Notes: generated from the letters alone by a model not told the origin. A stretch of DNA of 64,000 nucleotides from Magallana gigas (GCF_963853765.1 NC_088855.1:36766001-36830000); one strand, 5' to 3'; positions 3,298 through 61,458 are shown, numbered from the stretch's first letter. Translations and numbers: made by a program.

Positions 3298-4759
3298 TCA
3301 AGGAGCTGGATTGAACAGCATTTGATCCGATGGTACAATGTGTAGGGTTAGGTTCAAACAGGCAAACAGTGGATGCGGGTTTCCTTCATAACTGAAGATC
3401 TTCAGTACGATTATGTAGGCCCCCTGTATGAAATAGATTATCAAAGTGTGTATAGAAATATGACATTAAATATTTAGCATATATAGATATATATAGATAT
3501 ATTAGTTTTTCATTTTTAATGATGGAATTTAAGACTTTCCTTAATTTTATTAGCTTAAAAAGTACATAAATGAACAGAAACTCGCACAAAAAAAAAAGTC
3601 TTTTCATTTATTGCATGAAATTTTTAAATGAATTAAAAAAACTTACGACTGGCAATCTGTTCAAATCGCTGTATTTGTATTGAAACTTATGATTATCTGT
3701 TAAAGAGAAAACGGGTTTCATACTATTGTCAGTTGCATGAGAAATATATAGACTGCTTGTAAATATTAAAGTGAGACGTCAGAAAAGGACATTCAGACAT
3801 ATTTACGTCATTTTAAAAGATATATGAAGAATTAAATGATCGTCTTATACTAGTAAAATATGTACTTAAGAAAAATGGGAGAAAAGTAAGAAAAAAAAAC
3901 ACCAAAAAAAACAAAAACGAGACAGCGCCAACAATTGACATACTAAGTATGGTTTTAAAGAACAATATGCACGTATCTAAGATGTTTTAACATAAAGACT
4001 AAGTTGCTTTGTCATAAACTGACGTAGGACTAAGAGGTCATTATCATAGTTTACAGGTTTACAGATACTTTTGTGATTTACTACCTCCTTTCTTCAAAGG
4101 ACATTGTATAAGCGGTGTCACTTTACTGATATCATTGCAAGCGATCTCTTGAACCACAGAGAAAATAGGATCAGAGCTGCCCTCCATGTACACATCTACA
4201 TTGGCTTGACCCTTTCCGAAGTCTATGGCTGTTTAAGAAAAAAAACCCCGATTTATCAACATGATTATTGCAAGTAGACTTAAAACATAGAATTAACATA
4301 CGCACGCACGCAAGCCCCCCCCCCCCCCCCCAACTCATTTGCATGAAATATATCTTACGATTTGTGATGTCGAAATATAACTGGATAGACTTATCCGGGT
4401 CAATAACTTTCGGTCTCCATGAAACATTCAAATGGGCTCCATCTGGTCCTAAGAAGAAAAAAAATACGATAACAAGCAATTCAGATATAATGATAAATGC
4501 AGTCAATATATTATTGCTCACCACAAACAACGGCTGTTCCCGTATTGTTATCAACTTTAAACTTGTTCTGAAAGCTAGCAGCATTGTATGCGTCCGAAGG
4601 CAGCGAAGACCCAATGGATCTCTGTTCCTCGCTACTTTTCCCGCCAGATCGAATGGTCTCCTTGACTGAGCGTCCACTCCTACTACCGTTCCCCTGGGTG
4701 AACGAGAGAGCGACGAAGACAATGATGGAAGCCAATAACTGTACTATCAGACTGTTCAT
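3298..4759 (-). CDS. ML-1: secreted MD-2-related lipid-recognition (ML) domain protein, LY96/LY86-like, 215 aa
   Basis: Exons 4759-4522, 4448-4359, 4228-4085, 3696-3647, 3423-3298 (238+90+144+50+126 nt), all GT-AG. Signal peptide MNSLIVQLLASIIVFVALSFT. Domain: C|GPDGAHLNVSWRPKVIDPDKSIQLYFDITN|PIDFGKGQANVDVYMEGSSDPIFSVVQEIACNDISKVTPLIQCPLKKG|DNHKFQYKYSDLNRLPV|GAYIIVLKIFSYEGNPHPLFACLNLTLHIVPSDQMLFNPAP*. Confidence 0.9.
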
Positions 4760-6136
4760 TGTGAAGTCAAGCAAACCTATGTAATGGAGGAATATAACTC
4801 TTCATAACGACTTATGAATAAATCCTAATATCAGTTTGACTTCCTGGTGTTGACACTTGATTATAAATGCGCGTTCATGTTTTCTAGAACTTTATTTTGG
4901 GGTCAGTTTAATTTTAAAGTTCATTCAAGAAAACCAGTATACTTTAGTTAAAAGAGGTATGGGATAGGAGTGTGTAAAACTTTTATTCGTGTTGAAAAAA
5001 CATGAAATCTGATGCTTTCATTTTAATTTAATAAAAACCCACCCTGTTTGGGTAAAAAATAGTCCTTGTGTTGTATTTATGTTACAGGAGAGGGATGGAC
5101 ATGCACTTGTCATAACGCATTGTCAACCCCAAAATTAGCATAATACAAAATCAACCATTAATAAAAGACAACGATCTGTAAGTCTCAGTTGCCTATAAAA
5201 GAAACCACGAAAGAAACCCAGATAATTGTTACACATGTATAATCCCATTTTGAGAGGGGACAATACTTCCTCGTTTTGGGTTTTTTTTGGTATGTCATTT
5301 TTCCGCAAGCTCCTCTGTAAACTGTTAAAAATGAATAGAAATGTTTCAATCTGCAGAAAGGAAAATACCTGTATGTACAAAACAATGCATGTCACCAAAG
5401 AAAAACAAATCAAGGAAATACATGGAGGAGGACTGCGTTAACAACTGTCAGCTTTAGGAAGAGTTTACAAATTGACCGAAACCAATCAGGAAAAAAAAAC
5501 CCAATTATTATATTCATCTGCCTGGAAATTGAGAAAATGAAGTTGGAAAACAAAAACCAAACAAAATAAAAAACCATTAACAACACCAACAACAACAACA
5601 CCACAGCTATGCAAAATAAACTTGACTTTGGTGGCATTGGCTTCAATGTCTTGCTGGCAAAAGCCTCTTTGAAATGTACTATTTTTGTACGGAACAACTG
5701 AAATACTGTAAGGTTTGTGTTAGTTTATTGTATTCTCTCATATATATTTTGTGTCATCGATTACACGGTCAGCCTGAAGTGATCTTCAACCGGCCAAAGG
5801 ACTTACAAGCACTTATTTGTTGTACAAGTATATATGCATTATTCTTAAGAGAAAACGACAGTGTTAGTCACGTGTTTAAACACTTGTATTGTTATCCTCA
5901 CAACAAGTGGCACTTCATACGTACAAGTTCTCAAGCATTTTCTACATGTACATGTATATCTAGTGTTACATAATTGTCTGTAAGTCCACATCTACAGGAT
6001 TTTGTTAAAATTTCATTCCTAATCCTTAATATTATGAAAAAACAATTTAATTCAAAAATTGGTTGCGTTTAAAGTCTTTAGTAAGTTTCATTTATCTTCA
6101 TCTTATAGTACTGATGATTTATTTATAGTGATCTCT

Positions 6137-7552: not shown

Positions 7553-9091
7553 CTAAACAAGCTGTACCGTGAAGTTCAAACAGGCAAAGAGTGGATGTGG
7601 GTTTCCTTCGTAGCTAAAGATCTTAAGTGCGATGGTGTACGTTCCCTGTACAAAAATATCAAAATTTTGATTGTCACAAAATCATTAACTATATATCAAT
7701 ATGTTTCACCGATTCAGGTTTACTTCAGTCAACGTTTTTTTAATAAGATTGAAGAATTAAAGGATTAAAACAATATGGAGCATTTACCTAATTGCATCAT
7801 GTGATTGCATTAATCAAATATTTAATCTATTTTGTTTGACTCTCTACAAAAAATAAAGTTAAAAAAAATAAAGATGTAAAGAACTTACAGGTTTAAGCGC
7901 TTTTAATTTGTTGTACTCGAGAGAATGTACAAGTCTATCTGTTAAATAAAAAAAAACACCATATAATGTATAAAAGACTAAAACTAGTATTAATCTCTGA
8001 TTCAATATACATGTATAACATTGAGCGATGTTTTAAAAATTAATTCAATTAAGCAAAATAATGCAAGTTAATTTAATTTACTTACTTCCCTTTTTTAGAG
8101 GGCATTTAACAAATGGGGCCACTTGAGCAATTTGACTGCATGACATGTCTTGATCCAAGGAGAACATCGGGTCACTGCTACCCTTTTGATATAACTCTAA
8201 GTGAACCTGGCCCTTGTCGAAGTCGATGGCTGATAACAGAAAGAAAAATGTAATTAGTTTTCAATTTTTGGAAAAACATTCAATTTTAAAAGATGAAAAG
8301 CATAAGTGAGAGATATCTTACGATAAGTGATGTCAAAATCAACCTTGACGGACTTCTGGGAGTCGACGACCTTCGGTTCCCATGTGATGTTAAAGTGAGC
8401 TCCCTCTGGTCCTGCAAAGTCGGGTTTGAAAACTTATGTATCCCCATTCTTTTTTTAAATAAAGATTTTCGGCATACTCTTATTGTATTTTTGATGATAT
8501 CATACGTTTTAGAATTGTTTGCACAAAATTGACACTGCAAAGAGATCTGATCATTAACTAGAATAAACCTTTGCGTTATTTCATACAAATTTTGAAATAT
8601 TGTAAAAAGTTATCAAAAACTTACTGATTAAAGGAACATTTACAAGCTTTACGACTTCTGAGCAGTGTAAAAGCACATCGTTTTTGAATTAAGCAATTTA
8701 TGAGTAGAATGGTCCACCTACTAGTAATTAACCACCTACCACAAACAACGGCTTTTCCAGGATCGTTGTCGGTTTGGTCTAACCACCGTAAGCCGGAGAG
8801 CGGCAACATTGTTTTCATCTTTCTCAAGCTAGCAGCATTGGATGCCTTTGTCAACAGCGAAGATAACGAGGTCCAAGAGTTACTATTGTCTTCTGGGATT
8901 TCAAAACTAGCAGTATCTTCTTGTCCCTCCTCTCCTCTTCTCCAGCCAAATCGGATGATCTCCCTGATATTTATTTGTTTGTTGACCACGGCATATTTTG
9001 GGAGTCCCCTCCCCTCTCCATCCTCTTGGGAGAATGCAAGACTGACGAAGACAACGACGCAAACCAAAAACTGTGCAGCTAGAGTCTTCAT
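7553..9091 (-). CDS. ML-2: secreted ML-domain protein, LY96/LY86-like, 242 aa
   Basis: Exons 9091-8740, 8411-8322, 8229-8086, 7938-7889, 7645-7553 (352+90+144+50+93 nt). Domain: C|GPEGAHFNITWEPKVVDSQKSVKVDFDITY|PIDFDKGQVHLELYQKGSSDPMFSLDQDMSCSQIAQVAPFVKCPLKKG|NRLVHSLEYNKLKALKP|GTYTIALKIFSYEGNPHPLFACLNFTVQLV*. Confidence 0.9.

Positions 9092-10467: not shown

Positions 10468-10470
<3 letters not shown>

Positions 10471-10549
<79 letters not shown>
10471..10549. repeat. (GA)n microsatellite at the start of the putative 5' UTR intron of ML-2
   Basis: Direct read; ends ~14 nt from the minus-strand donor AAG|GTAAGA at 10564/10563. Confidence 0.95.
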
Positions 10550-13150: not shown

Positions 13151-14549
13151 TTACAAATGGCCAACTATTTCTGATGACGGATTGACAAACACACGTTTTG
13201 AAGGAACAATCTGCAGAGTTATGTTTAAACAGGCGAACAATGGAGGTGGATTTTTTTCATAACTGAAGATTTTTGCCACAACAGTGTAAGATCCCTGTAA
13301 GAAAAATGATTATAAGATTATAAATTAGTATGCCGGTCAAACATAATGAACTATGTTACAAATGATTACAGAATGCATGTGTAGTGCTTTTATCAATTTG
13401 TGTTCATAATTATTGAAATCATTAACTAATTTCAGAATCCAAATTCATAAAAGCTTGACCTCTTAAACCATATTTTGAAAAAGCGAGAAAACTCAAATCA
13501 TGTGAAAACCACATTTATAAATGAACCTACCTCGGGTACCCTATTCAAATCACTGTATCGGAAAGAATAAACATGTCTGTCTGTAAAATATAATTTTTGG
13601 ATAATAATGCAAATAACATAAATGAAACAAATACACCAATTTGTGCTTTATGATAAAGATATCAATACTTCATTCAATACCTCCTTTTTTTAACGGACAT
13701 CCTATAAAGGGGGCTACGTGATTGAGGTCATTGCAACCCACGTCTTGGTCCAGGGAGAAAATTGGGTCAGGACTACCTTCCATATAGACGTCTAAGTGGG
13801 CTAGACCCTTGTTGAAGTCGATAGCTATTTAGCAGAATGACATAATTAATCATTCTTAGCTTTTTTTGCATAAGATTACTAGCATATTCTATACATGGAA
13901 AAAATCTTACGATTGGTGACGTCGAAGTAAATCATGACAGACTTTTGTGGATCAATGACCTTTGGAACCCATGAAATGTTTAGATGAGCACCTTTTGGTC
14001 CTGTAAAGATAGATTAAACCTTATGTAATATTCTGGTATTTTTATATGCAAAGATCATATTTAACTATAAAATCCAAACAATTCATGACAACCATTCAAC
14101 AAAATTAGGACATATTATAAGAATTTCAAGAATTGTGGATATTGAAAAGAAGTCTCTGTAGATGGTCCTTCAAATAACTGTTGTTACCTACCACAAACAC
14201 TGGCTGTTCCTGTGTTGTTTTCTGCTTTATCTAACCACTGCAAGCCGGACAATGGCAGCATGCCTTTCAGGTTTTTCAAATTAGCGGCATTATGGGCCTT
14301 CGTCATTAGCGAAGACAGCGAAGTAAGCGAAGAATCAAATACTCCATTGTTCTCTGGGACTTCAATTTTCGCATTCTCTCCTTTCACATCCCCTCCTCTC
14401 CCTCCAAATCGGATGATCTCCTTGATATTTATTTGTTTGTCGATCACAACATAGTTTGTGTCTGATCTTGTTTTTCCGTCCTCTTGTGAAAACGAAAGAC
14501 TGACGAAAGAAATGATTGACAGCAACACTTGTACCTTTAATCTAGTCAT
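13151..14549 (-). CDS. ML-3: secreted ML-domain protein, LY96/LY86-like, 261 aa
   Basis: Exons 14549-14192, 14000-13911, 13824-13681, 13580-13531, 13294-13151 (358+90+144+50+144 nt). Domain: C|GPKGAHLNISWVPKVIDPQKSVMIYFDVTN|PIDFNKGLAHLDVYMEGSPDPIFSLDQDVGCNDLNHVAPFIGCPLKKG|DRHVYSFRYSDLNRVPE|GSYTVVAKIFSYEKNPPPLFACLNITLQIVPSKRVFVNPSSEIVGHL*. Confidence 0.9.
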
Positions 14550-15435
14550 TGTTTACACCTACAAACAAACATAATAATGAAATAACACTTTCTAACAATT
14601 TCACAGAATTTGCCATTTCTAAATTTGGATACTAGTACTAGAAAAACATTGAAATAGTGAGCTTTAAAGTCAATAAATTAGGTTTCTTTTTTTTAATTTG
14701 GACTGTTGGTGACAAACCCCATCTTTGAAACAATATTTCTCATTGATATACGCGATTTTTGGGTTTAAAATGTAGTTTTCTTTATATCTTTACTTTGGTA
14801 TTTGTTATTACGTGTAATGGACCCATTTTTAGCAGATGGATAAAACTCTCATATTCATGTTATATGACGTTTTGATATATCTTCATGTTAATTAGATAAA
14901 TTGTTTAGGTTGCAAATTAGACCCCATATAGCTAAGCGTTCCCTGTTCATTACTAGACTGAAATATTCAATAAATTGACCAAAAAAGTAGGATCAAATTT
15001 GTTTAAGATTTTAATATAAGGTACTGTTTCTCCAAATTTTAAAGACACCATTAAAATATGCAATAATTGTGAGGATATTGGGTCATATGCCAACATGCCA
15101 ACATTAGCATGCTAATAGCGTTGTCAATGAGGTTATTTATATGAATCGGAATTGAATTAAACACTTTATTTTAATTTTGAATAAAGATATTTAAGAATTG
15201 AAAAGTCCATATTGACAAATTGATATATCTGACCCTAGATAGCTTGGAATCTCTCTGCAGGTCATTATGACTAGATCTTATGAAATACAGTGAATACATG
15301 GCTATGTTGACAACATCTCGGTGTGACATTTCTAACAACGCGGGACAGGTCTGCTTATCTACAGCTCTCCCTATTTAAATATAAACCTATATTGTGGTAT
15401 AAACAAAATACAAGATATCCTTAAGAAAGATCCCC

Positions 15436-15438
<3 letters not shown>

Positions 15439-15485
<47 letters not shown>
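15439..15485. repeat. (GA)n microsatellite at the start of the putative 5' UTR intron of ML-3
   Basis: Direct read; 25 nt from the donor AAG|GTAAGG at 15511/15510. Confidence 0.95.
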
Positions 15486-18446: not shown

Positions 18447-19738
18447 TTAGACGACGTGTAAGGTGAAGTTCAAGCAGGCAAACAGATAGTGTTGGTTTCC
18501 TTCATAACTAACGATTTTTGCCACAATAACGTAATATCCCTGAAAAAAAAAATTACAAGACGTTTAATTCATAATTTTATATGGATTAAAAATATTCTAA
18601 ACCATGAAGCATATTTATGTGCTAAGGATAAATTGCTTATTTTTATAAAAAAGATATTTATTTAGATAAATGCTGGAGAAAATGGATTAATAACCATAAA
18701 AGAACTTACACCAGGTATTTTTTCTAAACTGTGGTAATGACGAGAAACAGAAAGTTTTTCTGTAAACAAATTTTTTTGCACAATTAATTTTAAAGGCAAT
18801 ACTACACGTAAAACAAACAAATGTACAAGTCAGAGCGAAATTTTAAAAAAAAGTATTGCTTTATTTAATACCTCCTTTTTTCAATGGACATGATGTAAAG
18901 GGGTCAACACTTTTGATATCAGTGCAAGCGAAGTCTGCAGCCAATGAAAAAATTGGGTTTGGACTACCATCAATATAGACATCTAAGTGGACTTGACCAT
19001 AGTTGAAGTCAATAGCTGTTGAGCATATAACGTGATTATAAAATACTTATATTTCAAGCATATGTATTGCTTATCATTATAGATCAAAATTGAAGATATC
19101 TTACGATTAGTGATATCGATGAAAATCCTGACGGATTTGTTTGTATCAATCACCTTTGGTACCCATGAAATATTTAGATGAGCACCATTTGGTCCTGTAA
19201 AGATAACAAGTTAAACCTGATGTAAAATTCTTGTATTCTTATGCCTAGATCATATGAAACTATAAAACACCAAACAATTCAAGACAATCATTCAACAAAA
19301 TAAAGACATTTTATTAGAATTTCAAGAACTGTGGATATAAACACATAATTTTAAAATAAAGATTTCTCTATAGAGTGGTCCAGCAAAATACTGTTGTTAC
19401 CTACCACAAACGATGGCTGTCCCTGTGTTGTTTTTTGCTTTAACCAACCCCTTCAAGCCAGACAACGGCACCATATTTTTCGAACTAGTAGCACTGTGGG
19501 CATCTGCCAGCAGTGGAGACAGCAAAGATTCTGACAAATCTTTGTCTGCTGAGACTTTATTCTTGGTTGTCTCTCTTTTCACCTCAACTTTTTTCCCACC
19601 AAATCGGATTATCTCTTTGATATTGAATTGCTTGTCAGCATAGTTTGAGCGTCCCCTTTCTTGTCTGTTCCCTTGGGAGAATGAGAAACTGACGATTACA
19701 GTGGTGGAAACCAACAGTTGTATGGTTAAACTAGTCAT
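18447..19738 (-). CDS. ML-4: secreted ML-domain protein, LY96/LY86-like, 236 aa
   Basis: Exons 19738-19405, 19194-19105, 19015-18872, 18759-18710, 18539-18447 (334+90+144+50+93 nt). Domain: C|GPNGAHLNISWVPKVIDTNKSVRIFIDITN|PIDFNYGQVHLDVYIDGSPNPIFSLAADFACTDIKSVDPFTSCPLKKG|EKLSVSRHYHSLEKIPG|GYYVIVAKIVSYEGNQHYLFACLNFTLHVV*. Confidence 0.9.
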
Positions 19739-22744: not shown

Positions 22745-24545
22745 TTACAAATGATCAAATTCATATTGTCCTTGGATTGGTGGTTTGGCAAGCATTTGAT
22801 CTGTTTCTTTTACCCTCAGGGTGAAGTTCAGACAGGCAAACAGCGCATGAGGGTTTGTATCATAACTGATGATCTTCAACACTATAGTATAAGCCCCCTG
22901 TACAAATAGAAGTATAACATAAGTATAAGTTATCATAATAATCAAGTATCATCGAACTATACATTTTATTTCACTAGTTTTTCCCTTTTCTTATTCAACA
23001 CACTGATTTAAAAATACCGGTAATCATCAAGAGTAAAAATAAACTTACGACAGGTACTCGACTTAAATCGCTGTAACTGAATGGTACTTTAATTCTATCT
23101 GGAAAAAGAGGAAACTTGTACAAAATAATGACAATGCCATACAGAAAACCATTAACGTCCATTGCATTAACAAATAATTTTGATTATTTAAGATTAAAGG
23201 ATAAGAACCGAGTTAAAATTTAAGTATGAAAACAAAATGCAACATTTTATGTCAATCTGCATAGTAAAGCATAAAAAAACCAAATAAACAAACAAAAAAA
23301 GGAAACAAACACCCACCCCCCCCCCCAAAAAAAAAACCCCGAAACAATTGACATGCATAATATTTGCTATAGAAAATAAATGTAAACGAAAACAAACTCT
23401 AAGACACTTGAAATTCATTTGTTTTATTTGCTCAAATCAGATTTAAAATTAATTTGAATTGTCCTTAAGCAAAAAATGCCGGGTTGAATACCCAGGCAAA
23501 TCTTATGAAATACAAAAAAAACCCAACTCCTTTCACTTTTTTTTTGTCGTGAAGCTACCTATAATACGGATTTTTTCTGATTACTTTTCCTTTTAACATT
23601 AAGAGCTTCAGAAGTATGGTATAATTAGAATAAATAAAGTCGTTCCAAATTAAAGTCTATAAAAGTCTATCAAGAATAACTTCAAATATCATAACATTCA
23701 ACTTAAATACTAGTTGTTTTAGTACGTACTTCCTTTTTTCAGAGGACATGTAATAAGTTTAGTCATCTGATGAATGTCATTACATGCGATGTCTTGGTCA
23801 ACGGAGAAAACTGGGTCAGGGCTATCCTCCAGATACACATCAATGTGACCTTGACCGTGGCCGAAATCAATAGCTATTTAAACAAATAAACGATAATAAT
23901 TTTTTAAAAATTCTTATTATTGCTAAAAAAAAATTGAACATTTATAAAGCCCTCTTACGATTGATGATGTCCAAATAAAATTTGATCGCCTTTTCTCTAT
24001 CGACGAGTTTTGGTGTCCATGAAACGTTCAAGTGGGCTCCCGGTGGTCCTGTCAAAGAAATTTTTGACATTTTCTAAGTTAGTTATTATTTAAACTTTAA
24101 ACGACAACTTTTAAAAAATAAAATTTTTCCTGAAAACCATATTAAGATTTTTAAAGATTATTGAAAAATAAACTATTGATAAAGAATTGCATGTTCTTAA
24201 ACTTAGTTGCCTACCACAAACGATGGCAGTTCCTGTGTCCGATAGCTCTAGGCCAGACAATGGCAACATATTTTTCATCTTCCTCAAATTAATAGCATTG
24301 GATACCCTCGTTAAAAGAGAAGTCAGTGATGATCCGGATTCCGCATTATCCTTGGGACTATCAAATTCTGAGACCTCTCCATTTGCATCGCCCCTTCTAC
24401 CAAATCTTATGATTTCCTTAACATTGATTTTCTTGTCGACCAGGACATAGTTTGGGCGTCCACGTCCCTCCCCGTCCTCCTGAGAGAACGAGAGACTGAT
24501 GAAGACAATGATGGATGCCAAGCACTGTATTGCCAGACTTTTCAT
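22745..24545 (-). CDS. ML-5: secreted ML-domain protein, LY96/LY86-like, 255 aa
   Basis: Exons 24545-24215, 24048-23959, 23873-23730, 23098-23049, 22897-22745 (331+90+144+50+153 nt). Domain: C|GPPGAHLNVSWTPKLVDREKAIKFYLDIIN|PIDFGHGQGHIDVYLEDSPDPVFSVDQDIACNDIHQMTKLITCPLKKG|NRIKVPFSYSDLSRVPV|GAYTIVLKIISYDTNPHALFACLNFTLRVKETDQMLAKPPIQGQYEFDHL*. Confidence 0.9.
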
Positions 24546-29399: not shown

Positions 29400-31119
29400 T
29401 TACGGTGCTGATTCCAAAAACATGTATGTTGATGGTCTAACCTCTAAGGTAACATTCAGACACACAAACAGCGCTTGGGTGTTTTGTAAATAACTGTACA
29501 CATTCAACACAATAGTGAAAGATCCCTGGAAGTAGAAAGTCGTATTTTACTAAAAATAATTATTTAGCATTAAATATGTTAATGAATACTTTTTTTTTTT
29601 AGAATTTTTGTATTAACCTCAAAATGAAATTTTATCAATTACCAAAGTGAATTCTTTGCTCTTTATGACACATTAACGAGTTTTATATACACCTTTTCTA
29701 TAGAATTCTCTATTTTTTCATTTGCAGAGGCTTTAAAGTATGTAAAAACAAAATCTTTATTAACAACTCGAACATTTACATGGGGGCTAAATACAGATAT
29801 GTCCACCGACAAAAACTTACGACTGGTAATGCTTGTAACTGGTTGAAATGCAAAGGAATTCTAGAAAACTTATCTGCAAATCAAAAGTTAAATTTTTCAT
29901 CGAACAAAAATGTTGATTAAATAACAGTATTGTAAAATTCACATTGTAATGAAGGCAATGAATACAAAAAACAAATTTCAAACCTCCTTTTTTTAGAGGG
30001 CACAGAATGGGATACAATTTAATAAAGTCATCACAAGCGATTTCTTGATCCATTGAAAAAAGTCTGTCAGGGCTACCTTTCAAATACACATCAACATGGG
30101 CCTTACCCTCGGTAAAGTTCGTAGCTGTGTAACAAAAAAAATTGTTCTTTTTAAAAAAAACGTTGTTTAAAAAAATATCAATGAGAAATATCAAAATATT
30201 GTTGTAAATAAGCCTTACGAGCAATGAAGTCGACATGAATCTGGACGAACCTTTCCGGGTCGATTATTTTTGGTTTCCATGTTACGTTAAATTCAGCACC
30301 TTCTGGTCCTTGAATTAAATTTAAATGTTGAAATAATTGTTATTTTTAAAGAGAATATTTATCTTTCAATAAGATCTTTTCTAAATTAGCTTACTCATGC
30401 GCTAAGGCCCATTAATATTATATACGAAGTTAGTTTTTCTTGTCTCTGCATAAAATCTATTGAATTCTTGATTTTAACACATAAATTGTTAAATTTGTTG
30501 GTAATACATAATCTTAGTAATAAATCATACTCAAAAGTCAACAACTCAACCATTTATCAATAGTTAGACAAAAACACATATCTTGGTCAAGTAATAATGC
30601 AAACAAACATTGATTCAATCCTCATTTCCCACTGATATTAAGGACATATCCTTTTTTAACGGAAACAGGCTTTTAAAAAAAAGGTGAAATAATTATGCAT
30701 TCTAATTATATAACGCTTCCTCTTTTCCATTTACAATGATTGTAAATGCTAAAAGAAAAATTGAAGGCACCACAAACAATAGCTCGTCCCGTGTTATTGT
30801 CTGTTTCTTTATTAATTGGTGTCGGCAACAACATTTTTGTCTTCCCCAAACTAGCATCAGTTGACGCCTTTATCGGCAAAAATAGCATAGATGCAAGTGA
30901 TCTGTATTTCTGGTGAACTTCTCCCTGCGCATCGCCTGCCCTCTCGCCATATCGGATGATCTCCTTGATACTGACTGGTTTGTTCACGATACTTTTTGGT
31001 CTTTTTCGCTCTGTTGCGTCCTGTTGGGAAAGCGAGAGACTGACAGACACAAGAAGGAGAAGTTTTATGGGCAGTCTTGTCTTTATCAAAGTCTGCAAGC
31101 AAAATTGAACGAAAATCAT
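29400..31119 (-). CDS. ML-6: secreted ML-domain protein, LY96/LY86-like, ~252 aa (start codon uncertain)
   Basis: Exons 31119-30771, 30308-30219, 30124-29984, 29873-29821, 29525-29400 (349+90+141+53+126 nt). Domain: C|GPEGAEFNVTWKPKIIDPERFVQIHVDFIA|PTNFTEGKAHVDVYLKGSPDRLFSMDQEIACDDFIKLYPILCPLKKG|DKFSRIPLHFNQLQALPV|GSFTIVLNVYSYLQNTQALFVCLNVTLEVRPSTYMFLESAP*. The first donor, GTGCCT, is weak. Confidence 0.85.
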
Positions 31120-48818: not shown

Positions 48819-50137
48819 TTATGATGTAGCAATGTGGAGGGTGAAGTTCACACAGGCAACCAGTGGTGGATTTGCCTCAAAACTGAAGATTTTCAAAACA
48901 ATGGTATACGATCCCTGTAAGAAATACATTATCAAAATTTATCTGCATTCGAATTTAGAGAGATAATGATGGGTAAAATAATATATAGTTCTGGTATGTG
49001 GATATTTCACAAAAAATTTACCACAGGTAGGTCGTCTAACTTGCTGTATTGAATCGCAAATCTGATTGGCGCTATAAAAAAGTGTACAAAATATTATCTT
49101 TTGTATTTGTCACACATATATCAATTTTGAGATATTTTGATTTATTTTCAATCTTAATTTACATACCTCCTTTTTTTAAAGGGCACATTATTAAAGGGTC
49201 CAGTTGTTTAAAGAAACTACAAGATGTTTCTCGATCCACGGAATACATTGGGTAAGAGCTACCTTTTAGATATACATCAAGAATCCCATGACCTTTGTCG
49301 AAGTATGTTGCTGTCATGCAAAACAAATTACATGTAATTATACAAAGACAAAAACTGTAAAGAAGAAAAATTATTTTTTCTGTTAAATACATAGATAAAT
49401 TAGGCTTTCATAAAGGCGATTTTATGAAACAATTTTCATAACATCTCTTCTTGAAACGATCAAAGATTCTTGTCATAGATCGAGATATAACGATTACTTG
49501 TTTAATAATTACACTAAAAGGAATTTCGACTATATAACTCAGTCATATTGCTTTTGCTTACGACTGATGATGTCAAAGTATATTCTAACACACTTATACG
49601 GGTCAATCACTTTGGGTCTCCACGTAATGTTCAGATGAGCACCTTTTGGTCCTTTAAAAAAAAAATCATTTTAAATATTAACGAAATAAAAATGTAATTA
49701 AGAATAAAGGTAAAAGATATATAAGGCATTGAGTAAAATTGATTTTGAGCAAGTGTGTTTGTAAATAAAGTAAATGTTCATTCTATTTTATTACCACAAA
49801 CAATGACTGTTCCCGTATTGTTATCAGCTTCATCTGACAACTGCAGTCCCACCAGCGACAGCTTATTTTTCAGAAATTTTAACTTTGCGTCAGTTGATGT
49901 CTTTGCAAACAGAAAAGACTTGGAAGACCATAAGGATTCGTTGTTCTGTATGATCTCAAAATCCTCAATGTTTTTATTCTGTGATTCGACCCTTTTTCTA
50001 TCGATGAAAATTTTGTAATTGAATTTCTTGCTGACCGTGGCATAGCGTTGGGAATTCCGTCTTGCTCCATCCTCATGAGAGACAGACTGACTGATGAAAA
50101 CAACGACGAATGCCAGTTGTACCGATAGATTCATCAT
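48819..50137 (-). CDS. ML-8: secreted ML-domain protein, LY96/LY86-like, 240 aa (5-Cys subfamily, closest paralog of ML-7)
   Basis: Exons 50137-49795, 49651-49562, 49310-49167, 49071-49022, 48914-48819 (343+90+144+50+96 nt). Domain: C|GPKGAHLNITWRPKVIDPYKCVRIYFDIIS|PTYFDKGHGILDVYLKGSSYPMYSVDRETSCSFFKQLDPLIMCPLKKG|APIRFAIQYSKLDDLPV|GSYTIVLKIFSFEANPPLVACVNFTLHIATS*. Confidence 0.9.
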
Positions 50138-53100
50138 TAAGAGACTGCAACCAAGAAAAAGCAACATTACCCTTTAGATTTTTAACTTATATTTTGACCT
50201 CTTGTTAAGCACACTTGCGATTGGAAGATACTATTTCCTGTGTATCTTACAATCTTACATTTACACGCTATCTACCAAGAAAAACCAATTTTCCTTTTTC
50301 AAAACGGTTTTTAAATCGGGATTTTCTCTTCAAGTAGTTTCAAACACAAATGTACGTATGTTTAAATTATAGAAAAAAGGTTCCCTTGTTCTTGTTATTC
50401 ATAGAATTAAAGTGATATGACTTTTAAGGAAAGCTGAAACAAAATTAAACAATGTAGTGCGTTAAATTGGTGCAATACCGTCATTGTCATGTTAATTAAA
50501 TTTGATTTTGGTTGTGCATTTAAATACGGGGTGCCTGACACAAAACGGAAAAAAAAGTTTCCTCATAAAACAAAATAAGGAAGTGCATCAGACATTATCA
50601 AATTTTATTTCTAAAACGGACTTTATAATAATTTTCCTTTACGTGTCCGTTTAATGAGTTGAAATTATTATATGTATTCATATATCATGGCTGAAAACCA
50701 CTGCCATTGCAACCAAAGCAGCTAAATTCTAATCCCCCCTCTCCCAACAGGACTAAGTGGTGAAACGTTGGTTGTTGATTCATCCGTGGATGTCACCTGT
50801 TTACCAAAAGTTTTATTCACAGTAATCTTTTTCAGCTGAAGAGATAGATAAAGTTATCTGTGCGATAAGATGTGTTACCCAATATCTTGCAACGCGTAAT
50901 GTAGCAAGTTGTCTGTGTCAGTGTTGTGATATTGGCATTTGACAGGAAATATTTTTTTTTAATATGCCGATAAAGTTCCTAAGGCCGCTGAAAAATATTG
51001 AATCAAGAGGATCACACTTCTGCTTCTTTTTTAGATTACAAAAGAATACCACCCTGTCTGATTAGCTTCGAGCTGAAATAAGGTCATAAAAGTACAAGTA
51101 ATTGCAATATTACAATATTTTATAGTTCCTCAACTGCTACAAAGGTACATGTACCAGTTAAGAATACTTTTTTAAGAATAAAGATCTCTTCTAGTTTTTA
51201 AAATGCAAAAACTAATTCACTTAGTTAATGTTGGAAGAAAAAATAATTAATGACATTTTCCTAAATTCAATTAAATAAGGCGAAAGAAAGGTATACATGT
51301 TCTAAAAGTTGTAGAAAGAAAATTAGCTTGATAAGCACTCTATTTTATAGCTTTCCAAGAGCAACATATATGATTCAGAGATTCTGAAGCTAAAAAAATA
51401 AGCAAGTTAACTATCAAATCAATCAAATTAAAGAAATACTGGCATTTTAAGAGATTAACATGACTTTAATCGAATTTTGCTGAGTTGGAACACCTTTCAA
51501 AAAAATGAAATATAATTAAGTATCTGAATCAATATGTGAATGAAGGTTGCCTGCTTATTTACAAAATCCATATATATTTGAGGGATGATAAAATAACATT
51601 TTTTTAACGTTACAAGTTGTAGGGTAAATTTTAAACAATTAAACAGTTGAAGATTTTTTCACAAGATTTGCAACACAATGGTGTAATTTTCCTATGCAAG
51701 TGATGCGTTTAAACTATTAATCAGTTCAAATATATCATTAACTAACTATGAGAGATATTGTTTTAGACAACAGTTAAGTCTGCCATACAATTTCAAGACG
51801 AGATACAATTTTAAGAAAATTTAAAAACTTTTTACGCGTTTTATGGCTTTTTATTCTCACAATTTTATCAATAAAAGGAAAGAAAGGATTTAAACTGTGA
51901 AATCCTGTTCCGGTCGAACAATTTAAAATATAAAATTCCCTTATTTGTTAATCGTGTTTGTATTTAAATTTAGATATTTAACGCACGTAAATTAAAGATA
52001 ACACTTATGTAGCACATGTGAATTGATGACACCCGTATGGTAATTTCCTGTAGTAAAGGTTGATCGCTAAAAAGGTGTTAAAATTATGATAGCTTTTGGT
52101 TCTGCTTTGCTTTCATTGCAATTGACAATAATTCCGATTATTTTGAGTTTAATAAATTCAAAACTTGAAGGCATATGTGGTATTTTTTTCCTGATTACCT
52201 GTAAAAATTTTCATTACTTATGAAAAGATTTCTCAAAACTTACCTAAGAATTACATATTTGAAGTCACCCTCGTTACAGCTATATCATATGCCAAATATT
52301 TGTTTCCGCACATAAAAATTTATGTTTTGAAAACCCTCATTTAAAGTTGGCCACATGATATCATCAACAACATTGATAGATTCAAGAGGACAAGATACAA
52401 GCATGACAAGGAAATGTTTAAGCCATATCACATGTACTGCAAAACCAAGTTATGCAAAAAAAAAATACAAGTTAAATGTCATGGCGTCATATCACCTTTA
52501 ATACACTATATTGAATTGAGATTATTTGATTATGTCTATTTAACTGCGTACGAAATGGCTATGGATATTGCATCAGACTACTGACCCACAGGCCTCGAGT
52601 TCAAAAATAGCAGGAGCTTTTGTTAACTTTACATTCGAATATTTTAAATATTGTAAATAATGGGGTTTTTTCAAACCCGAAATTACTATTTCAGAGTTTT
52701 TTTTTTTCAAAACGTACATCTAATAAAAATAGCCAATAACCAATATACCCATTATTCAAGGTCATGGTCAGGTACATGTTAATGGCAGGTGCCTACAAAT
52801 ATATGAAATTCAAGATATAAATCATTAGCTTTGTTTGAGAGGATAAACCCGGGTTAAATTTTTTGGTAAACAATATGGAAAATCACGTTTAAATCTGTCA
52901 TTATATATTAAATATGAAGGGAATGTAAGTAACAAATCACTGAGTTTTGTCAATTTTTTTTACTAATGAAATATATCTAGAATGCACCCAGTCTCTCCAA
53001 AAAACGACATTAATCAAGTTTTTACTTCCTTTTAAAATTGATGGCAAAGGAAAAATAGGTATCGGGATTAATTTTCCCATGATTTGATATAGAATGTAAA

Positions 53101-54169: not shown

Positions 54170-54171
<2 letters not shown>

Positions 54172-54249
<78 letters not shown>
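54172..54249. repeat. (TA)n microsatellite
   Basis: Direct read. Confidence 0.95.
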
Positions 54250-54251
<2 letters not shown>

Positions 54252-54441: not shown

Positions 54442-56169
54442 TCAAACAATATCTTCTGAAGTCTTAGAAATGATTTGAGGTGTTTGAGTGGCGGACATAT
54501 GCTTTGATGATTCAATCTGTAGACTAAAGTTCAAACAAGCAAACAGTGGTGGAGGTTTAGCAGCGTAACTGAAGATCTTCAACAAAACGATATAAGACCC
54601 CTGTATAAAAAAATCGATAAATGAGAACGTCTAATGGTTTCATGATACTCGTGAATCAGCATTAATTCAAATTCCAAAGAACTCGTATACAAGGATATAT
54701 CAAACTCTATTGCATTGGTTTAAATTTCAACTGCAGAACTTGTAAACAGCTATGACTTCCTCAGAAAACTATATCTTATATGAATTGTCACATCAACGAA
54801 TGTTAAAAATATTGTTGCAATAAAAACAGTATTATTTTGTGTGCATACAATCTAAATAATAATTCATTTAGAAATTTTAGCATTGAATTCTCTGTTGGTT
54901 CTCTTTGTGTCTTTTACTGTGAACAAGAACCACAACAAACTTTTTGCTTTTAGTTTTAGAGCATTATGAAACACTAAGGTAAAACCAGTCTATTGCACCA
55001 AAATCCTTCGTTATTACAGGACAGTGCTTGGTGAAAGCTACATGCAAAAATAACATTTACATGTACATACTAGAGAAAAAATACTTACAGCAGGTTGTAA
55101 TTGTGTTTCGCTGTACTTAAACGATATGCGGAAACCATCTGTAAAAATAAAAGAGATGGAGAGAATGTTAGTTTATACGTTAAAATAAATGACGAATGAA
55201 AATATGTTTTAAAACACGATAAAACAACTGCATAAAGCTTAATAGAAATAAGACTCAGTTTCCGTACTCCCTCTTTTTATAGGACATCTTATAAGTGGGA
55301 CCCAATTATTGATGTCAGTGCAGGTTATCCCTTCATCAATAGAGAAAACTGGGTTGGGTATACCCTTTCTATAGACATCTATGCGAGCGAGACCCTCCTT
55401 AAAATCGATGGCTGTTGAGCAAAAAAAAATATTGATAGTTTCGTTTGATCATTCATATTTCTTTGAATAATGCAATATGTGATTTCGAATACGTCTTACG
55501 ATAAACAAGATCCAGGTATATCTGGACTGATTTTTCGGTACTGATGACTTTTGGTTTCCATGTTATGTTCAGATGAGCACCTTCTGGTCCTTTGAAAAAA
55601 CAGAAAATTGATAATATTAATTAACTGCCTTTATTTTACTGAAAATAAAACTTTAAGTTTCAAAACTCCTTGAATATTTGAACTATTAGTTGTAGACACA
55701 AAAATCGTTTATATACAAGCTTTATTAAATACAAATCCTGAAATATAAGTACCTGGCAGCATATAAGTATGTTTCAAAACGGTTGTCCAATATTCAATGA
55801 AGAAACGTGCATCATTATAAAAAAAAGTAAAAGATATTTACCACAAACAAATGCTGTTCCTGTGCTGTTATCAGTATTATTGAACCACTGTAAACCTTTT
55901 GATTGGAACATATCATTATTCAATTTAAAGGCATTGGATATTTTCGTTAAAAAAGAAGACAGCTGAGATTTATTGGATTCCTTTTCCTCAGCATTCTCTC
56001 TCACTGTTACACTTTTTGTCTCGCCTATTCGTATAATCTCTTCGACATTGATTTTTTTGTCGAATAGAAGATAGTTTGTGTGTCCTTTTACTTCTTTGTC
56101 CTTTTGTGAGAAGGAGATACTGCTGAAAACAGCTATAGATGCCAACAGTTGTACAGCTAGGATTTTCAT
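54442..56169 (-). CDS. ML-9: secreted ML-domain protein, LY96/LY86-like, 256 aa
   Basis: Exons 56169-55842, 55589-55500, 55411-55268, 55138-55089, 54600-54442 (328+90+144+50+159 nt). Domain: C|GPEGAHLNITWKPKVISTEKSVQIYLDLVY|PIDFKEGLARIDVYRKGIPNPVFSIDEGITCTDINNWVPLIRCPIKRG|NGFRISFKYSETQLQPA|GSYIVLLKIFSYAAKPPPLFACLNFSLQIESSKHMSATQTPQIISKTSEDIV*. Confidence 0.9.
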
Positions 56170-58420: not shown

Positions 58421-59722
58421 TAGGTATGTTTTTAATGGCTTTAAAACAAGTATGAACAATTATCTCAACTTTTGTGACTTATTTCGTTATTACAAATTCG
58501 ATGTAAAATTATTGGAGAGTTTCGAGTTTGGTGGGGGGGGGGGGGGGGAGGGGGGGGGGGGTTGGAGCTTTTTTATAACATATTTCCCTTGTAAAAGTAG
58601 TCAGAAAGTGTGTAATTTACTTTGTGAAAAGTCAACATAAAGAAACAACATTTTCCAAACACAAATATTCAAATGAAGGTGAAAAACAAGAATTCTATCA
58701 TTAATTACGAAAAAACGTCTTCCAAAGATGAAACAATACCTCCTGCTTAGTCGCTGCTTTAAATTAACCATTGAACCAAATAGACGTGACAGCTATCACT
58801 TTATGCAAGTTTACATTGAAAAAAAAGCAACAACATTTTCGATAATATTCGGAGTTCTTTTAAACAAACATTACAAAACGGGATAACATTTTATTAATAT
58901 AATCTAAACGATACCCTTTATGCTGTGTGTTGAAATAAATATGAAGGTTACAATAAATACAACATTTGTTATTATAAATATTCGTCACATAAGAGCAACT
59001 TTTTTTATCAGGAATAAATCAAGATTGAATAAAGAATGTGACATGCAATGAATGTCAAGGGAATTTGCCCAGTTGGCAGAATTGTTACCTTTCTTCTTCT
59101 TCTTCTTCTTTTTCTTCTTATGAAAAACGTTTTCTGCTGTTTGGTAGGTAAAGTTTTGTTAATTACAAGCGTTAACCTACTTCACGCGAGACAAGCCACC
59201 AAACGGTGGACTGTGTTCGTCCTGATCAAGGAGATTTTTAACATCACAGCTATAGTCATTTCAGACTTTGATGTTTCGATTGTTGTTTTTTACCTTTATT
59301 ATTAAGAAGACAATAATATGATTTCGAGAATGAAGGACACATTGTGTTTGTTTTCATTCAGTCATTCTTTATTCCTTTTAGGCTTTACAACACATCAGTA
59401 TTGACATAGATATAATATAGATTCCATACATATAAACAGATGAACAAGAGCTAGAATGGACAAAATGCCTTAATTAGTTAAGGTAACATAATATCATTTC
59501 GCAATATTAATCTACACTTTTATTATATATATTCTTTCAAATTCTGTTCATACCTTTTGAATTTTCTGAGTTTAAAAGTTGCACAAGTTTGATCATTGAA
59601 GGCCTTTTCCAAAAATAATGTTTGATATATTTTTTCCATTATCTATGTCATGGGAATTTAAAATGTGAGATTGTATAATTAAGATATGCAAATAGAAATT
59701 GGATTAGCAACATATGTTTTGT

Positions 59723-61458
59723 CTATACATATTGGAACGTAAAGTTCAAACACGAGAACAGTAATGGGGGATTTTCAGCATAGCTAAATATCTTCATCAC
59801 CAAAATTTGTTCTTTTACCTATAAAAAAAAAATGTTCAACATTTACCAATCCCAATTCATATTTAAGAATTTGATAACGCTGTGACATCTGTTTCCAATA
59901 ACTAGTGATACCAAATTTTTTTTCGATAAAATCAACATTAGACAAAAAGAGGGGGGATGAAAAAAAATGGCGTTGGAAATTAAAACTGAAAGTGCGCAGA
60001 ATACAGAAAAATCCTCGGCAAACAGGAATAAGCGTCAATGTCTAACAGGTCACTCTAGTAAAATAAGATCATTGAAAAGTTTATCTCCACATATGAGAAA
60101 TTAATTTCTTAAGGAAGAAATACTGCAAACAATGACTTTTGATAGAATATCTTCTTTCAGGAATTTATCTCTCATTGATATCATTGATTTGCCTGGGCAA
60201 TGATAAAAGAAACCCAATAGATCAAAAGAGGTAGTAACAGGCTACCTACGTATGATCTGAAAAGGAACTTACGAGTGGTGGCTGTCGTAATGGGAAATCA
60301 GTATAAGAATATTGGATTCTTTCTGTAAACGAAGAAATTATTCGTATAAAGCAAAGTCATCGTTGTAAAAATAAGGGCTAGTAACCCAAATTATTAAAAA
60401 TGAAAGATCTTTAAAAAGAATTAACAATTTCTTTACTCACCTCCTTTTTCCAAAGGACATTTTTGTTGCATCTTTGGGACTTTTAGGATGTCACTGCAAG
60501 TTATATCTTCGTCCAATGAGAAAATTGGGGTATTTCCTAAGTAAAATTCCACGTACATCCGACCCTTGTTGAAGTCAGTAGCTGTTTTAAAGAAGAATTA
60601 ATATAATAACTAAATGATAAATGAGTCGTTCTTTTATATTTTTCCTCCACAAATACAACATTGTATAACTATTTATCTTACGACTGATCATGTCTACAGA
60701 AAACGTGACCGGTTTTCCAAATTCGATTATTTTGGGTATCCACGTGACGTTCAGGTGAGCTCCTTTTGGTCCTAATGAGGAAAAATCCATTTATGAGCAT
60801 ATTTTTTTTAATTTATGTTTTATTTCACTTATAATTAAGGGGTGTAGGAAACCCTCGTTTTGAAACAAAACTGTCTTTCGAAATAAACTACAAATATATC
60901 TTTTTTCTCTTGTTTTATACAAAGGAACTTCAGTTGGTTACGAATGTAAATTTTGTTATACATTTTGCACCTTAATAAGTTCTGAAATCTAAAAAAGTCC
61001 ATTTTCAATATTTTAAAACAGTGGTAAAACTTTGTACTCTCATCCATATAAAGATCTCAGAGTATTCCATACGACCTTAATTTCAGTCTTACTGTGTGTC
61101 TTAAAGGTATTCTTTACAAGTATAAAGATGGAACGGTCCATAGAACTATCATCGTACCACAAACCACAGCAGTTCCTGTGTTATTGTCGGCATTATCATC
61201 TCCCAAGGTAACAGCTTCGGAAGCGTTCGCCAGCAGCTGAGACAGTAAATATCCGAGGTTTTTCTTTTCATGGGGAGCTTCCATCTCTCCATGTGACTCG
61301 TCTCTTATTCCGCCAAATCGGATGATCTCCTTGATACTGATTTTCTTGTCGAAAACAACATAGGTTGGGTGGTCCCTGCCTTCTCCGTCCTCTTTGGAGA
61401 ACGAAAGACTAATGAAGACAATGATGGAAGCCAAAAACTGTACAGCCAAGCTTTTCAT
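59723..61458 (-). CDS. ML-10: secreted ML-domain protein, LY96/LY86-like, 225 aa (most divergent domain)
   Basis: Exons 61458-61158, 60771-60682, 60581-60441, 60322-60273, 59818-59723 (301+90+141+50+96 nt). Domain: C|GPKGAHLNVTWIPKIIEFGKPVTFSVDMIS|PTDFNKGRMYVEFYLGNTPIFSLDEDITCSDILKVPKMQQKCPLEKG|ERIQYSYTDFPLRQPPL|VKEQILVMKIFSYAENPPLLFSCLNFTFQYV*. Confidence 0.88.

What the first reader, a model, noticed from the sequence alone, without database searches (positions are those of the whole stretch)
3298..61458. All four intron positions match vertebrate LY96 (MD-2), pointing to the MD-1/MD-2 lineage rather than NPC2
Seen: phases 1,1,1,0. Intron 1 falls one base after the first Cys codon; exon 2 is exactly 90 nt in 10/10 copies; intron 3 follows K/R-G; exon 4 is 50-53 nt; exon 5 starts G-x-Y/F in 9/10. 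Recalled, not looked up: human LY96 coding exons are 112/90/129/53/99 nt with the same phases, exon 1 ending just after Cys37, exon 3 ending ALKG, exon 5 starting GKY. Exon 2 aligns without gaps (ISINVNP vs LNITWKP). The four Cys map to MD-2 C37-C148 and C95-C105; the C25-C51 pair is absent. The CxNxT sequon resembles MD-1 VACANAT. MD-1/MD-2 are usually treated as vertebrate-restricted and invertebrate ML proteins as NPC2-like. Inference: this gene architecture predates the protostome-deuterostome split.
Basis: partly seen in the sequence, partly recalled or inferred. Interest (0 to 1): 0.85.

Follow-up and report, generated by a model that had tools for sequence, protein, structure and literature searches.

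The report
Oyster ML genes with MD-1-type introns
Ten neighbouring Pacific oyster genes encode secreted lipid-binding (ML-domain) proteins whose four introns sit exactly where those of mouse MD-1 (Ly86) sit, but three of the four are also in ordinary NPC2-type genes, so only one intron hints at kinship with the vertebrate LPS co-receptor family.

Summary
The window (Magallana/Crassostrea gigas, chromosome piece C3) holds ten intact, minus-strand, five-exon genes with intron phases 1,1,1,0. Exon 2 is 90 nt in all ten, exon 3 is 144 or 141 nt, and exon 4 is 50 or 53 nt. RNA reads and assembled transcripts reproduce the splice junctions.

The proteins have a signal peptide, a long disordered N-terminal stretch and an ML domain (Pfam PF02221; AlphaFold pLDDT 93).

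I mapped the real gene of Mus caroli Ly86 (MD-1). Its coding exons are 136/87/129/53/84 nt, phases 1,1,1,0, and all four introns fall in the same alignment columns as the oyster genes. Mussel, abalone, chiton and two annelid relatives have the same structure.

Introns 1, 2 and 4 also occur, same place and phase, in the oyster's own NPC2-like genes and in mammalian NPC2. Intron 1 also occurs in mite Der f 2. Only intron 3, after C-x-x-K-K-G, is shared with MD-1 and absent from NPC2.

Profile comparisons place the family equally near MD-1 and NPC2. A decisive multi-clade tree could not be built, and LY96 exons 3-5 were not verified. The scan had already noted the variable N-terminal extension on this window.

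The parts
3298..4759 (-). g1, 215 aa ML-domain gene
   Evidence: Exons 4759-4522, 4448-4359, 4228-4085, 3696-3647, 3423-3298. GT-AG throughout, phases 1,1,1,0.
7553..9091 (-). g2, 242 aa
   Evidence: Exons 9091-8740, 8411-8322, 8229-8086, 7938-7889, 7645-7553. The transcript protein P0002 has the same splicing and 98% identity. Pfam PF02221 scores 28 bits.
13151..14549 (-). g3, 261 aa
   Evidence: Exons 14549-14192, 14000-13911, 13824-13681, 13580-13531, 13294-13151. All four introns are seen as joints in RNA runs X7, X8, X9 and X24.
18447..19738 (-). g4, 236 aa
   Evidence: Exons 19738-19405, 19194-19105, 19015-18872, 18759-18710, 18539-18447. The transcript protein P0015 is near-identical over the ML-domain region printed.
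22745..24545 (-). g5, 255 aa
   Evidence: Exons 24545-24215 (an upstream in-frame ATG lies at 24569), 24048-23959, 23873-23730, 23098-23049, 22897-22745.
29400..31119 (-). g6, 252 aa
   Evidence: Exons 31119-30771, 30308-30219, 30124-29984 (141 nt), 29873-29821 (53 nt), 29525-29400. P0032 is an exact part of it.
37955..39352 (-). g7, 240 aa
   Evidence: Exons 39352-39013, 38808-38719, 38462-38319, 38221-38172, 38053-37955.
48819..50167 (-). g8, 250 aa (annotated form 240 aa from the Met at about 50137) = LOC105343154
   Evidence: Exons 50167-49795, 49651-49562, 49310-49167, 49071-49022, 48914-48819. P0020 is an exact substring. AlphaFold model of its ML domain has pLDDT 92.9.
54442..56169 (-). 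g9, 256 aa
   Evidence: Exons 56169-55842, 55589-55500, 55411-55268, 55138-55089, 54600-54442.
59723..61458 (-). g10, 225 aa, most divergent copy
   Evidence: Exons 61458-61158, 60771-60682, 60581-60441 (141 nt), 60322-60273, 59818-59723. Exon 5 starts VKEQ rather than G-x-Y. No transcript confirms this last exon.

Best explanation
The window holds the whole Pacific-oyster complement, ten old tandem paralogues, of a mollusc-plus-annelid subfamily of secreted ML-domain (MD-2-related lipid-recognition) proteins.

Each protein has three parts: a signal peptide, a 60-100 aa variable and disordered N-terminal stretch, and a beta-cup ML domain with two disulfides. The domain most likely holds a lipid in its hydrophobic cavity outside the cell.

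The five-exon gene consists of the ancestral three-intron ML scaffold, also kept by NPC2 genes of oyster and mammals, plus one further phase-1 intron right after the C-x-x-K-K-G motif. That extra intron is otherwise seen only in vertebrate MD-1 (measured here) and, by recollection, MD-2.

The most economical reading is that this spiralian family and the vertebrate MD-1/MD-2 pair descend from one bilaterian ML gene that already carried the fourth intron. They would then be each other's nearest relatives within the ML superfamily.

By analogy the oyster proteins would act as soluble binders of microbial or host lipids, possibly handing them to LRR or Toll-like receptors.

Shown here: gene models, expression, ML fold, intron coincidences.
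Inferred: secretion, lipid ligand, receptor partnership, sister relation to MD-1/MD-2.
For: - Gene models and splicing; transcripts.
- ML domain: Pfam 28-39 bits against a cut-off of 22.7. The AlphaFold model has pLDDT 92.9, and Foldseek hits are all ML proteins.
- Ly86 exon map 136/87/129/53/84, phases 1,1,1,0, with all four introns in the same alignment columns as the oyster genes.
- The same architecture in Mytilus, Owenia, Capitella, Liolophura and Haliotis.
- Intron 3 is absent from six oyster NPC2-like loci (exon 3 reads through; spliced models for four of them, npcD's exon-2 donor doubtful) and from mammalian NPC2, whose exon 3 runs c.191-363.
- The best single-sequence PDB hit is MD-1, with shared KKGE, P-x-G-x-Y and AC-x-N-x-T motifs.
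- Among structural hits the highest sequence identity is to MD-1, at 21-23%.
- hhalign to LY86 gives probability 96%, E 1.2e-9, 25% identity.
- The second-nearest ESM-Atlas cluster is 'Lymphocyte antigen 96'.
- The array is maintained by selection: ML-domain dN/dS is about 0.25 with dS about 1.5.
- A C1q-domain exon lies inside the array.
- Insect ML proteins pair with Toll receptors (PMC11536157).
Against: - Three of the four introns are also in NPC2-type genes, so only one character is specific.
- Profile scores do not favour MD-1. The family HMM gives median 25.3 bits to LY86 and 25.3 to oyster NPC2-like proteins. hhalign is slightly better to NPC2-like (8e-12). The PDB profile search ranks NPC2 (31 bits) just above MD-1 (30) and finds no MD-2.
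- TM-scores of the model are higher to NPC2, Der p 2 and PG/PI-TP (0.63-0.74) than to MD-1/MD-2 (0.5-0.66).
- The MD-specific N-terminal disulfide is missing.
- Among the roughly 30 of the 95 representative hits whose source organism could be looked up, no ecdysozoan or deuterostome appears.
- LY96 exons 3-5 were not verified.
- No ligand, partner or tissue data were obtained.
Confidence: 0.5

Rival explanations
1. Intron 3 belonged to the ancestral bilaterian (or older) ML gene and was lost once in the NPC2 stem. On this reading the spiralian family is an independent, slowly evolving ML lineage that simply kept the full ancestral architecture. It has no closer kinship to MD-1/MD-2 than NPC2 has.
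For: - The family sits midway between LY86 and NPC2-like in every profile test, while LY86 and NPC2-like barely recognise each other: about 0 bits, hhalign E 0.18. That pattern suits a conservative lineage.
- It carries only the two disulfides common to all ML proteins.
- Intron loss is common.
Against: It needs the loss to predate the oyster-mammal split in NPC2. It does not by itself explain the MD-1-like C-terminal motifs or the highest pairwise identity to MD-1.
Confidence: 0.25
2. The family is a spiralian offshoot of NPC2-type genes, a secreted sterol or lipid carrier. It lost the C-x4-C hairpin disulfide and gained an intron that by coincidence lies at the MD-1/MD-2 site.
For: - hhalign is slightly stronger to the oyster's own NPC2-like genes: E 8e-12, score 67.
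- The top PDB profile hits are NPC2.
- The model superposes better on NPC2, Der p 2 and PG/PI-TP.
- The identified members are all molluscs or annelids.
Against: - It requires a gain at exactly the same nucleotide and phase as in Ly86, anchored by an invariant Cys and the KKG motif.
- Identity to NPC2-like proteins is only 14%, against 25% to LY86.
- Exon 2 is 84-96 nt as in MD genes (87-90 nt), not 105-108 nt as in NPC2.
Confidence: 0.15
3. Intron 3 was gained independently in vertebrate MD-1/MD-2 and in the spiralian family, at a favoured proto-splice site created by the conserved AAR-AAR-GGN-G codons. On this reading the coincidence says nothing about relationship.
For: The site lies in a motif conserved across ML proteins (CPLVKG in Der f 2, CPIQKD in NPC2). 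The exon side ends in ..GGAG in the one junction read here (g1), close to a splice-site consensus.
Against: - Exact parallel gains are rare. With about 400 possible slots the chance per gain is well under 2%, even if gains are restricted to proto-splice sites.
- NPC2 and Der f 2 carry a similar motif yet have no intron there.
Confidence: 0.1

Closest known systems
MD-1 (LY86), partner of RP105/CD180
   Same: - ML fold.
- Five coding exons with phases 1,1,1,0 and all four introns in identical alignment columns; exon 4 is 53 nt in Ly86 against 50-53 nt here.
- Shared motifs KKG|E, P-x-G-x-Y and AC-x-N-x-T.
- hhalign E 1.2e-9 with 25% identity.
   Different: - No counterpart of the LY86 C33-C58 disulfide.
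- A 60-100 aa disordered N-terminal extension.
- The predicted cup is more closed: TM 0.5-0.55.
- No known LRR partner.
- Ten tandem copies rather than one gene.
MD-2 (LY96), TLR4 co-receptor
   Same: - Exon 2 of 90 nt flanked by phase-1 introns, the first one base after the Cys that pairs with the C-terminal Cys (PMC9755862).
- The second-nearest ESM-Atlas cluster.
- Foldseek hits 2e56, 2z64 and 5ijb.
   Different: - No sequence-profile hit to MD-2 chains at E<10.
- LY96 exons 3-5 were not checked here.
- The C25-C51 disulfide is absent.
- LPS binding is untested.
NPC2 (vertebrate NPC2 and the oyster's own NPC2-like genes on C6, C8 and C4)
   Same: - ML fold.
- Introns 1, 2 and 4 at the same positions and phases.
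- hhalign E 8e-12.
- The best PDB profile hits.
   Different: - NPC2 genes have no intron after CP-x-x-x-G/D; exon 3 is 170-176 nt in one piece.
- NPC2 exon 2 is 105-108 nt and carries a C-x4-C disulfide that is lacking here.
- Only 14% identity.
- No N-terminal extension in NPC2.
Mite group-2 allergens (Der p 2 / Der f 2) and insect ML proteins (for example SlML-11 with Toll5)
   Same: - ML fold and the CPL-x-KG motif.
- Der f 2 keeps the phase-1 intron after the first Cys (PMC6079044).
- Insect ML proteins give a precedent for ML-Toll partnerships in protostomes (PMC11536157).
   Different: - Der f 2 has a single intron.
- Profile scores to the family are weak: 15-17 bits.
- Three disulfides.

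Membership tests
ML domain superfamily (Pfam PF02221, E1_DerP2_DerF2) | Significant match to the family profile | tested here: met
   P0002, P0007 and P0008 score 28.2-39.5 bits against a cut-off of 22.7. Single exons alone give no hit.
ML domain superfamily (Pfam PF02221, E1_DerP2_DerF2) | Beta-cup (Ig-like sandwich) fold shared with NPC2, MD-1/2, GM2A and Der p 2 | tested here: met
   AlphaFold model with pLDDT 92.9 and seven strands. The Foldseek top 27 PDB hits are all ML proteins, E down to 6e-6. Swiss-Prot models agree.
ML domain superfamily (Pfam PF02221, E1_DerP2_DerF2) | First Cys pairs with the C-terminal Cys, plus a middle Cys pair | tested here: inconclusive
   Four Cys are invariant or nearly so, at the expected columns. 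The bonds themselves were not measured in the model.
MD-1/MD-2 (LY86/LY96) subfamily | Five coding exons, phases 1,1,1,0, with a phase-1 intron straight after C-x-x-(K/R)-K-G and a 50-53 nt exon 4 | tested here: met
   Mus caroli Ly86 was mapped exactly. The introns fall in the same columns as the window genes. For LY96 only exons 1-2 are backed, by the literature.
MD-1/MD-2 (LY86/LY96) subfamily | Additional N-terminal disulfide (LY86 C33-C58; MD-2 C25-C51, the latter from general knowledge) | tested here: not met
   There is no Cys at those columns in any of the ten genes, nor in the family consensus.
MD-1/MD-2 (LY86/LY96) subfamily | Closer in sequence to MD-1/MD-2 than to other ML groups | tested here: inconclusive
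   LY86 and NPC2-like tie at median 25.3 bits each. hhalign gives 1.2e-9 against 8e-12. No MD-2 hit. Pairwise identity is highest to MD-1.
MD-1/MD-2 (LY86/LY96) subfamily | Forms a complex with a TLR4/RP105-type LRR receptor and binds lipid A or phospholipid | not testable with these tools
   No partner candidate was established and no complex job was sent.
MD-1/MD-2 (LY86/LY96) subfamily | Groups with LY86/LY96 in a superfamily phylogeny | not testable with these tools
   Only three clades could be fetched (the family, mammalian LY86 and oyster NPC2-like). An unrooted three-clade tree carries no information.
NPC2 subfamily | Uninterrupted exon from the strand after intron 2 through the Cys pair to Y-P-x (170-176 nt), phases 1,1,0 | tested here: not met
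   The window genes split this stretch with intron 3. Oyster npcA, npcB and npcE and cat/human NPC2 do not.
NPC2 subfamily | C-x4-C hairpin disulfide in exon 2 (three disulfides in all) | tested here: not met
   Exon 2 of 8 of the ten genes has no Cys; g7 and g8 carry a single, non-homologous Cys (PYKCVR). The oyster NPC2-like genes have C-x4-C there.

The most novel reading that the evidence does not exclude
Molluscs and annelids keep a direct protostome counterpart of the vertebrate MD-1/MD-2 co-receptor lineage, marked by a shared fourth intron. The MD-type ML gene would then predate the protostome-deuterostome split. In oysters, which have greatly expanded TLR and C1q repertoires, it was expanded to ten secreted paralogues. 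These could serve as lipid- or LPS-presenting partners of Toll-like receptors.
Probability: 0.4. Interest if true: 0.7.

Novelty: new variant of a known kind. Interest (0 to 1): 0.5.

Why it matters
MD-2 and MD-1 are the lipid-sensing halves of TLR4 and RP105. Their origin is placed within vertebrates: extensive BLAST searches found no ly96 gene or Md-2 protein in cartilaginous or jawless fishes (bioRxiv 10.1101/817528).

A conserved, expressed protostome family that shares a rare genomic character with MD-1 offers a concrete candidate for the pre-vertebrate ancestor of that lineage. It can be tested directly: lipid or LPS binding, pairing with oyster TLRs, and response to Vibrio or OsHV-1 infection.

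The result also corrects the argument. The three-intron ML scaffold is ancient and shared with NPC2, so intron counts alone must not be used to call invertebrate ML genes 'MD-2-like'.

Tried and rejected
- **Pfam on single exon peptides** gave nothing. The six-frame PF02221 scan of the genome did not detect the window genes. The ML assignment needed full-length transcript proteins, reached through an open frame that runs on from exon 1 of g2.
- **Single-sequence and narrow-profile PDB searches** were not significant. Only the 64-sequence family profile reached NPC2 and MD-1.
- **The LY86 profile against the oyster genome** found nothing. This is uninformative because the exons are short.
- **LY96 exons 3-5:** a literature search found no exon table. 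The original MD-2s paper (PMC3057206) is not held.
- **To reach LY86** I added to a query alignment a 59-aa mouse MD-1 fragment that one search had printed. The human LY86 hit (P0173) was left out of all analyses.
- **Gene models:** Bradybaena P0040 is not on record for a gene look-up. Models for oyster npcC and npcF failed, and npcD has a doubtful exon-2 donor. Only npcA, npcB and npcE are used as evidence.
- **The P0052 transcript tail** for a g10-like copy is not encoded in the window.
- **No complex prediction** was sent, because no receptor partner is supported.
- **The full-length AlphaFold model** left residues 1-110 below pLDDT 50, so it offers no mechanism for the N-terminal extension.
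- **Rfam** found nothing in the window.

Full report
**What is in the window**

Repeat analysis and reading of the first copy showed a roughly 5-kb unit repeated on the minus strand. Using copy 1 as a guide, I enumerated splice sites for every exon and assembled ten complete gene models.

- All ten models are open, and all 40 introns are GT-AG.
- Phases are 1,1,1,0 throughout.
- Exon 2 is 90 nt in all ten. Exon 3 is 144 nt (141 in g6 and g10). Exon 4 is 50 nt (53 in g6).
- Intron 1 lies one base after the Cys of a conserved ..NNTGTA(V/I)VC motif.
- Intron 3 follows (K/Q/E)(K/R)G plus one base.
- Exon 5 begins G-x-Y/F in nine copies.

Independent evidence supports the models.
- A transcript-derived protein (P0002) is spliced exactly as g2 was modelled.
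- P0020, annotated by NCBI as uncharacterized LOC105343154 of Magallana (Crassostrea) gigas, is an exact substring of g8. This also identifies the genome.
- RNA reads and contigs of four runs show the four introns of g3 as joints, base for base.
- A family profile finds matches in this 564-Mb genome only inside the window: ten exon-3 hits, a lower bound.
- The paralogues are old and kept by selection. In the ML domain dS is about 1.5 and dN/dS about 0.25. The N-terminal part has dN/dS of 0.5-1.

**What the proteins are**

- Full-length relatives match Pfam PF02221 (ML domain) at 28-39 bits against a cut-off of 22.7.
- An AlphaFold model of the g8 ML domain, built on a 64-sequence alignment, reaches pLDDT 92.9.
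- Foldseek returns only ML proteins at the top: yeast and human NPC2, MD-1, Der p 2/Der f 2, MD-2 and GM2A.
- The first 110 residues of the full-length g8 product P0020 (signal peptide plus a variable stretch) are not modelled, with pLDDT below 50; most paralogues, though not g7/g8, carry a conserved ..INIKEIIRFG.. core there.
- An exhaustive profile search found 95 representative relatives. Those with names are bivalves, gastropods, a chiton and annelids, mostly labelled 'uncharacterized' or 'MD-2-related lipid-recognition domain-containing'. One hit is labelled as an apicomplexan parasite of polychaetes, presumably host RNA.

**Testing the intron claim with real data**

I obtained mammalian LY86 proteins by adding to the query a short mouse MD-1 fragment that a PDB search had printed. 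I then fetched the Mus caroli Ly86 locus and mapped the protein exactly.

- Ly86 coding exons are 136/87/129/53/84 nt, phases 1,1,1,0.
- The junctions are YQSC|(D), GIIL|(R), CGRKKG|(E) and DVPQ|GEY.

The same mapping on other spiralians gave these exon sizes:

| Species | Coding exons (nt) |
|---|---|
| Mytilus | 187/90/147/50/87 |
| Owenia | 145/84/141/53/132 |
| Capitella | 130/96/144/59/84 |
| Liolophura (chiton) | 148/87/147/50/87 |
| Haliotis | 217/84/141/50/84 |

All have phases 1,1,1,0.

In one MAFFT alignment, the four introns of the oyster genes, of Mytilus, Owenia and Capitella, and of mouse Ly86 fall in identical columns.

For LY96 the literature confirms that skipping exon 2 removes 30 aa and alters junction residue D38 (PMC9755862). 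Exons 3-5 of LY96 could not be verified.

**Is the pattern specific to MD-1/MD-2?**

No. The oyster genome has canonical NPC2-like genes on C6, C8 and C4. I built models for npcA, npcB and npcE.

- Their exons 2 and 3 are 105-108 and 170-176 nt, with phases 1,1,0.
- The first intron lies one base after the first Cys.
- The second lies in the same column as window intron 2.
- The third, phase 0 between Y-P-x and the next strand, lies in the same column as window intron 4.

Mammalian NPC2 agrees.
- IVS1 is at c.82, with aberrant insertions between residues 28 and 29 (PMC4232374).
- IVS2 is at c.190 (PMC7404201).
- Cat exon 4 starts at c.364 (PMC10252137).
- A further, NPC2-specific intron lies at c.441, named in the hits (PMC3792693, not read here).
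- Placed on the HMM alignment printed, c.190 and c.363/364 fall on the columns of window introns 2 and 4.

Der f 2 keeps only a phase-1 intron in codon 9, just after Cys8 (PMC6079044).

So introns 1, 2 and 4 are the old ML scaffold. Only intron 3 is shared by the spiralian family and MD-1 and absent from every NPC2-type gene examined. It splits NPC2's single 170-176 nt exon into 141-147 plus 50-59 nt.

**Other tests of affinity are neutral or mixed**

| Comparison | Result |
|---|---|
| Family profile vs PDB | NPC2 30-31 bits; MD-1 22-30 bits; no MD-2 |
| Family HMM vs 57 LY86 proteins | median 25.3 bits |
| Family HMM vs oyster NPC2-like | median 25.3 bits |
| LY86 and NPC2-like HMMs vs each other | about 0 bits |
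| hhalign, family vs LY86 | E 1.2e-9, 25% identity |
| hhalign, family vs NPC2-like | E 8e-12, 14% identity |
| hhalign, LY86 vs NPC2-like | E 0.18 |

- The family is thus a bridge between the two groups.
- In favour of MD-1: the best single-sequence PDB hit, the highest identity among structural hits, the shared KKG|E, P-x-G-x-Y and AC-x-N-x-T motifs, exon 2 of 84-96 nt rather than 105-108, and an ESM-Atlas neighbour named LY96.
- Against: higher TM-scores to NPC2-type structures, absence of the MD-specific disulfide, and no identified member outside molluscs and annelids.
- A real phylogenetic test needs at least a fourth ML clade, which could not be fetched.

**Verdict**

- The inference that the ML gene scaffold predates the protostome-deuterostome split is sound, but that scaffold belongs to NPC2 too.
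- The specific claim of MD-1/MD-2 kinship rests on one shared intron plus modest sequence signals. I put it at about 0.4-0.5.
- Function is inferred: secreted lipid-binding proteins, plausibly in immune recognition. The grounds are the tandem expansion, a C1q-domain gene inside the array and the precedent of insect ML-Toll pairs.

Noticed in passing
window 42681-43106 (-): An open frame inside the gap between g7 and g8 matches the C1q domain (Pfam PF00386, 74 bits, E 1e-20). It is probably an exon of a C1q-domain-containing gene, a family greatly expanded in oyster immunity, sitting in the middle of the ML array.
   Followed up: partly
window 10469-10549, 15430-15485, 21300-21360, 31860-31925, 33640-33680 and others: Long (GA)n microsatellites recur 0.7-1.5 kb upstream of several copies (g2, g3, g4, g6), so they seem to be part of the duplicated unit. 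Long (TA)n runs lie at about 29070-29150, 33770-33850 and 54170-54250.
   Followed up: no
exon 1 of all ten genes, for example window 8740-9091 and 14192-14549 (-): Exon 1 encodes 60-100 variable residues between the signal peptide and the ML domain. They include a conserved ..(K/Q)INIKEIIRFG.. core and an LPLSGL motif. AlphaFold gives pLDDT below 50 for residues 1-110, and dN/dS here is 0.5-1. This may be a propeptide or a disordered tail. Relatives in other molluscs and annelids have much shorter extensions.
   Followed up: partly
window 8621-9091 (-) and Logan proteins P0001, P0003-P0006: Several assembled transcripts read through the exon-1 donor into intron 1 (products of 121-169 aa ending in intron-encoded residues). 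Intron-1-retaining or unspliced RNAs of g2/g3-like copies are therefore common in public RNA data.
   Followed up: no
window 35899-36094: Two tandem 98-nt units, each internally palindromic (arms ..GGAAATATATTGGGTTGATCAATCTCATAGA..). They look like a small MITE-like element. A 264-nt direct repeat lies at 39817-40516.
   Followed up: no
own genome G000:C6:12468000-12480000 (L001, L003, L005, L006, L011, L014): A separate cluster holds four NPC2-like genes. One of them (npcC) has an in-frame stop in exon 3 and lacks the middle Cys pair, so it may be a pseudogene or a divergent copy. The C4 gene (npcF) also lacks the middle Cys pair.
   Followed up: partly
L016 (Haliotis asinina gene for P0026): Intron 1 is placed one codon further downstream (..TSCG|(G)..) than in all other family members. 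This is either a one-codon slide or an ambiguous junction in a GG repeat.
   Followed up: no
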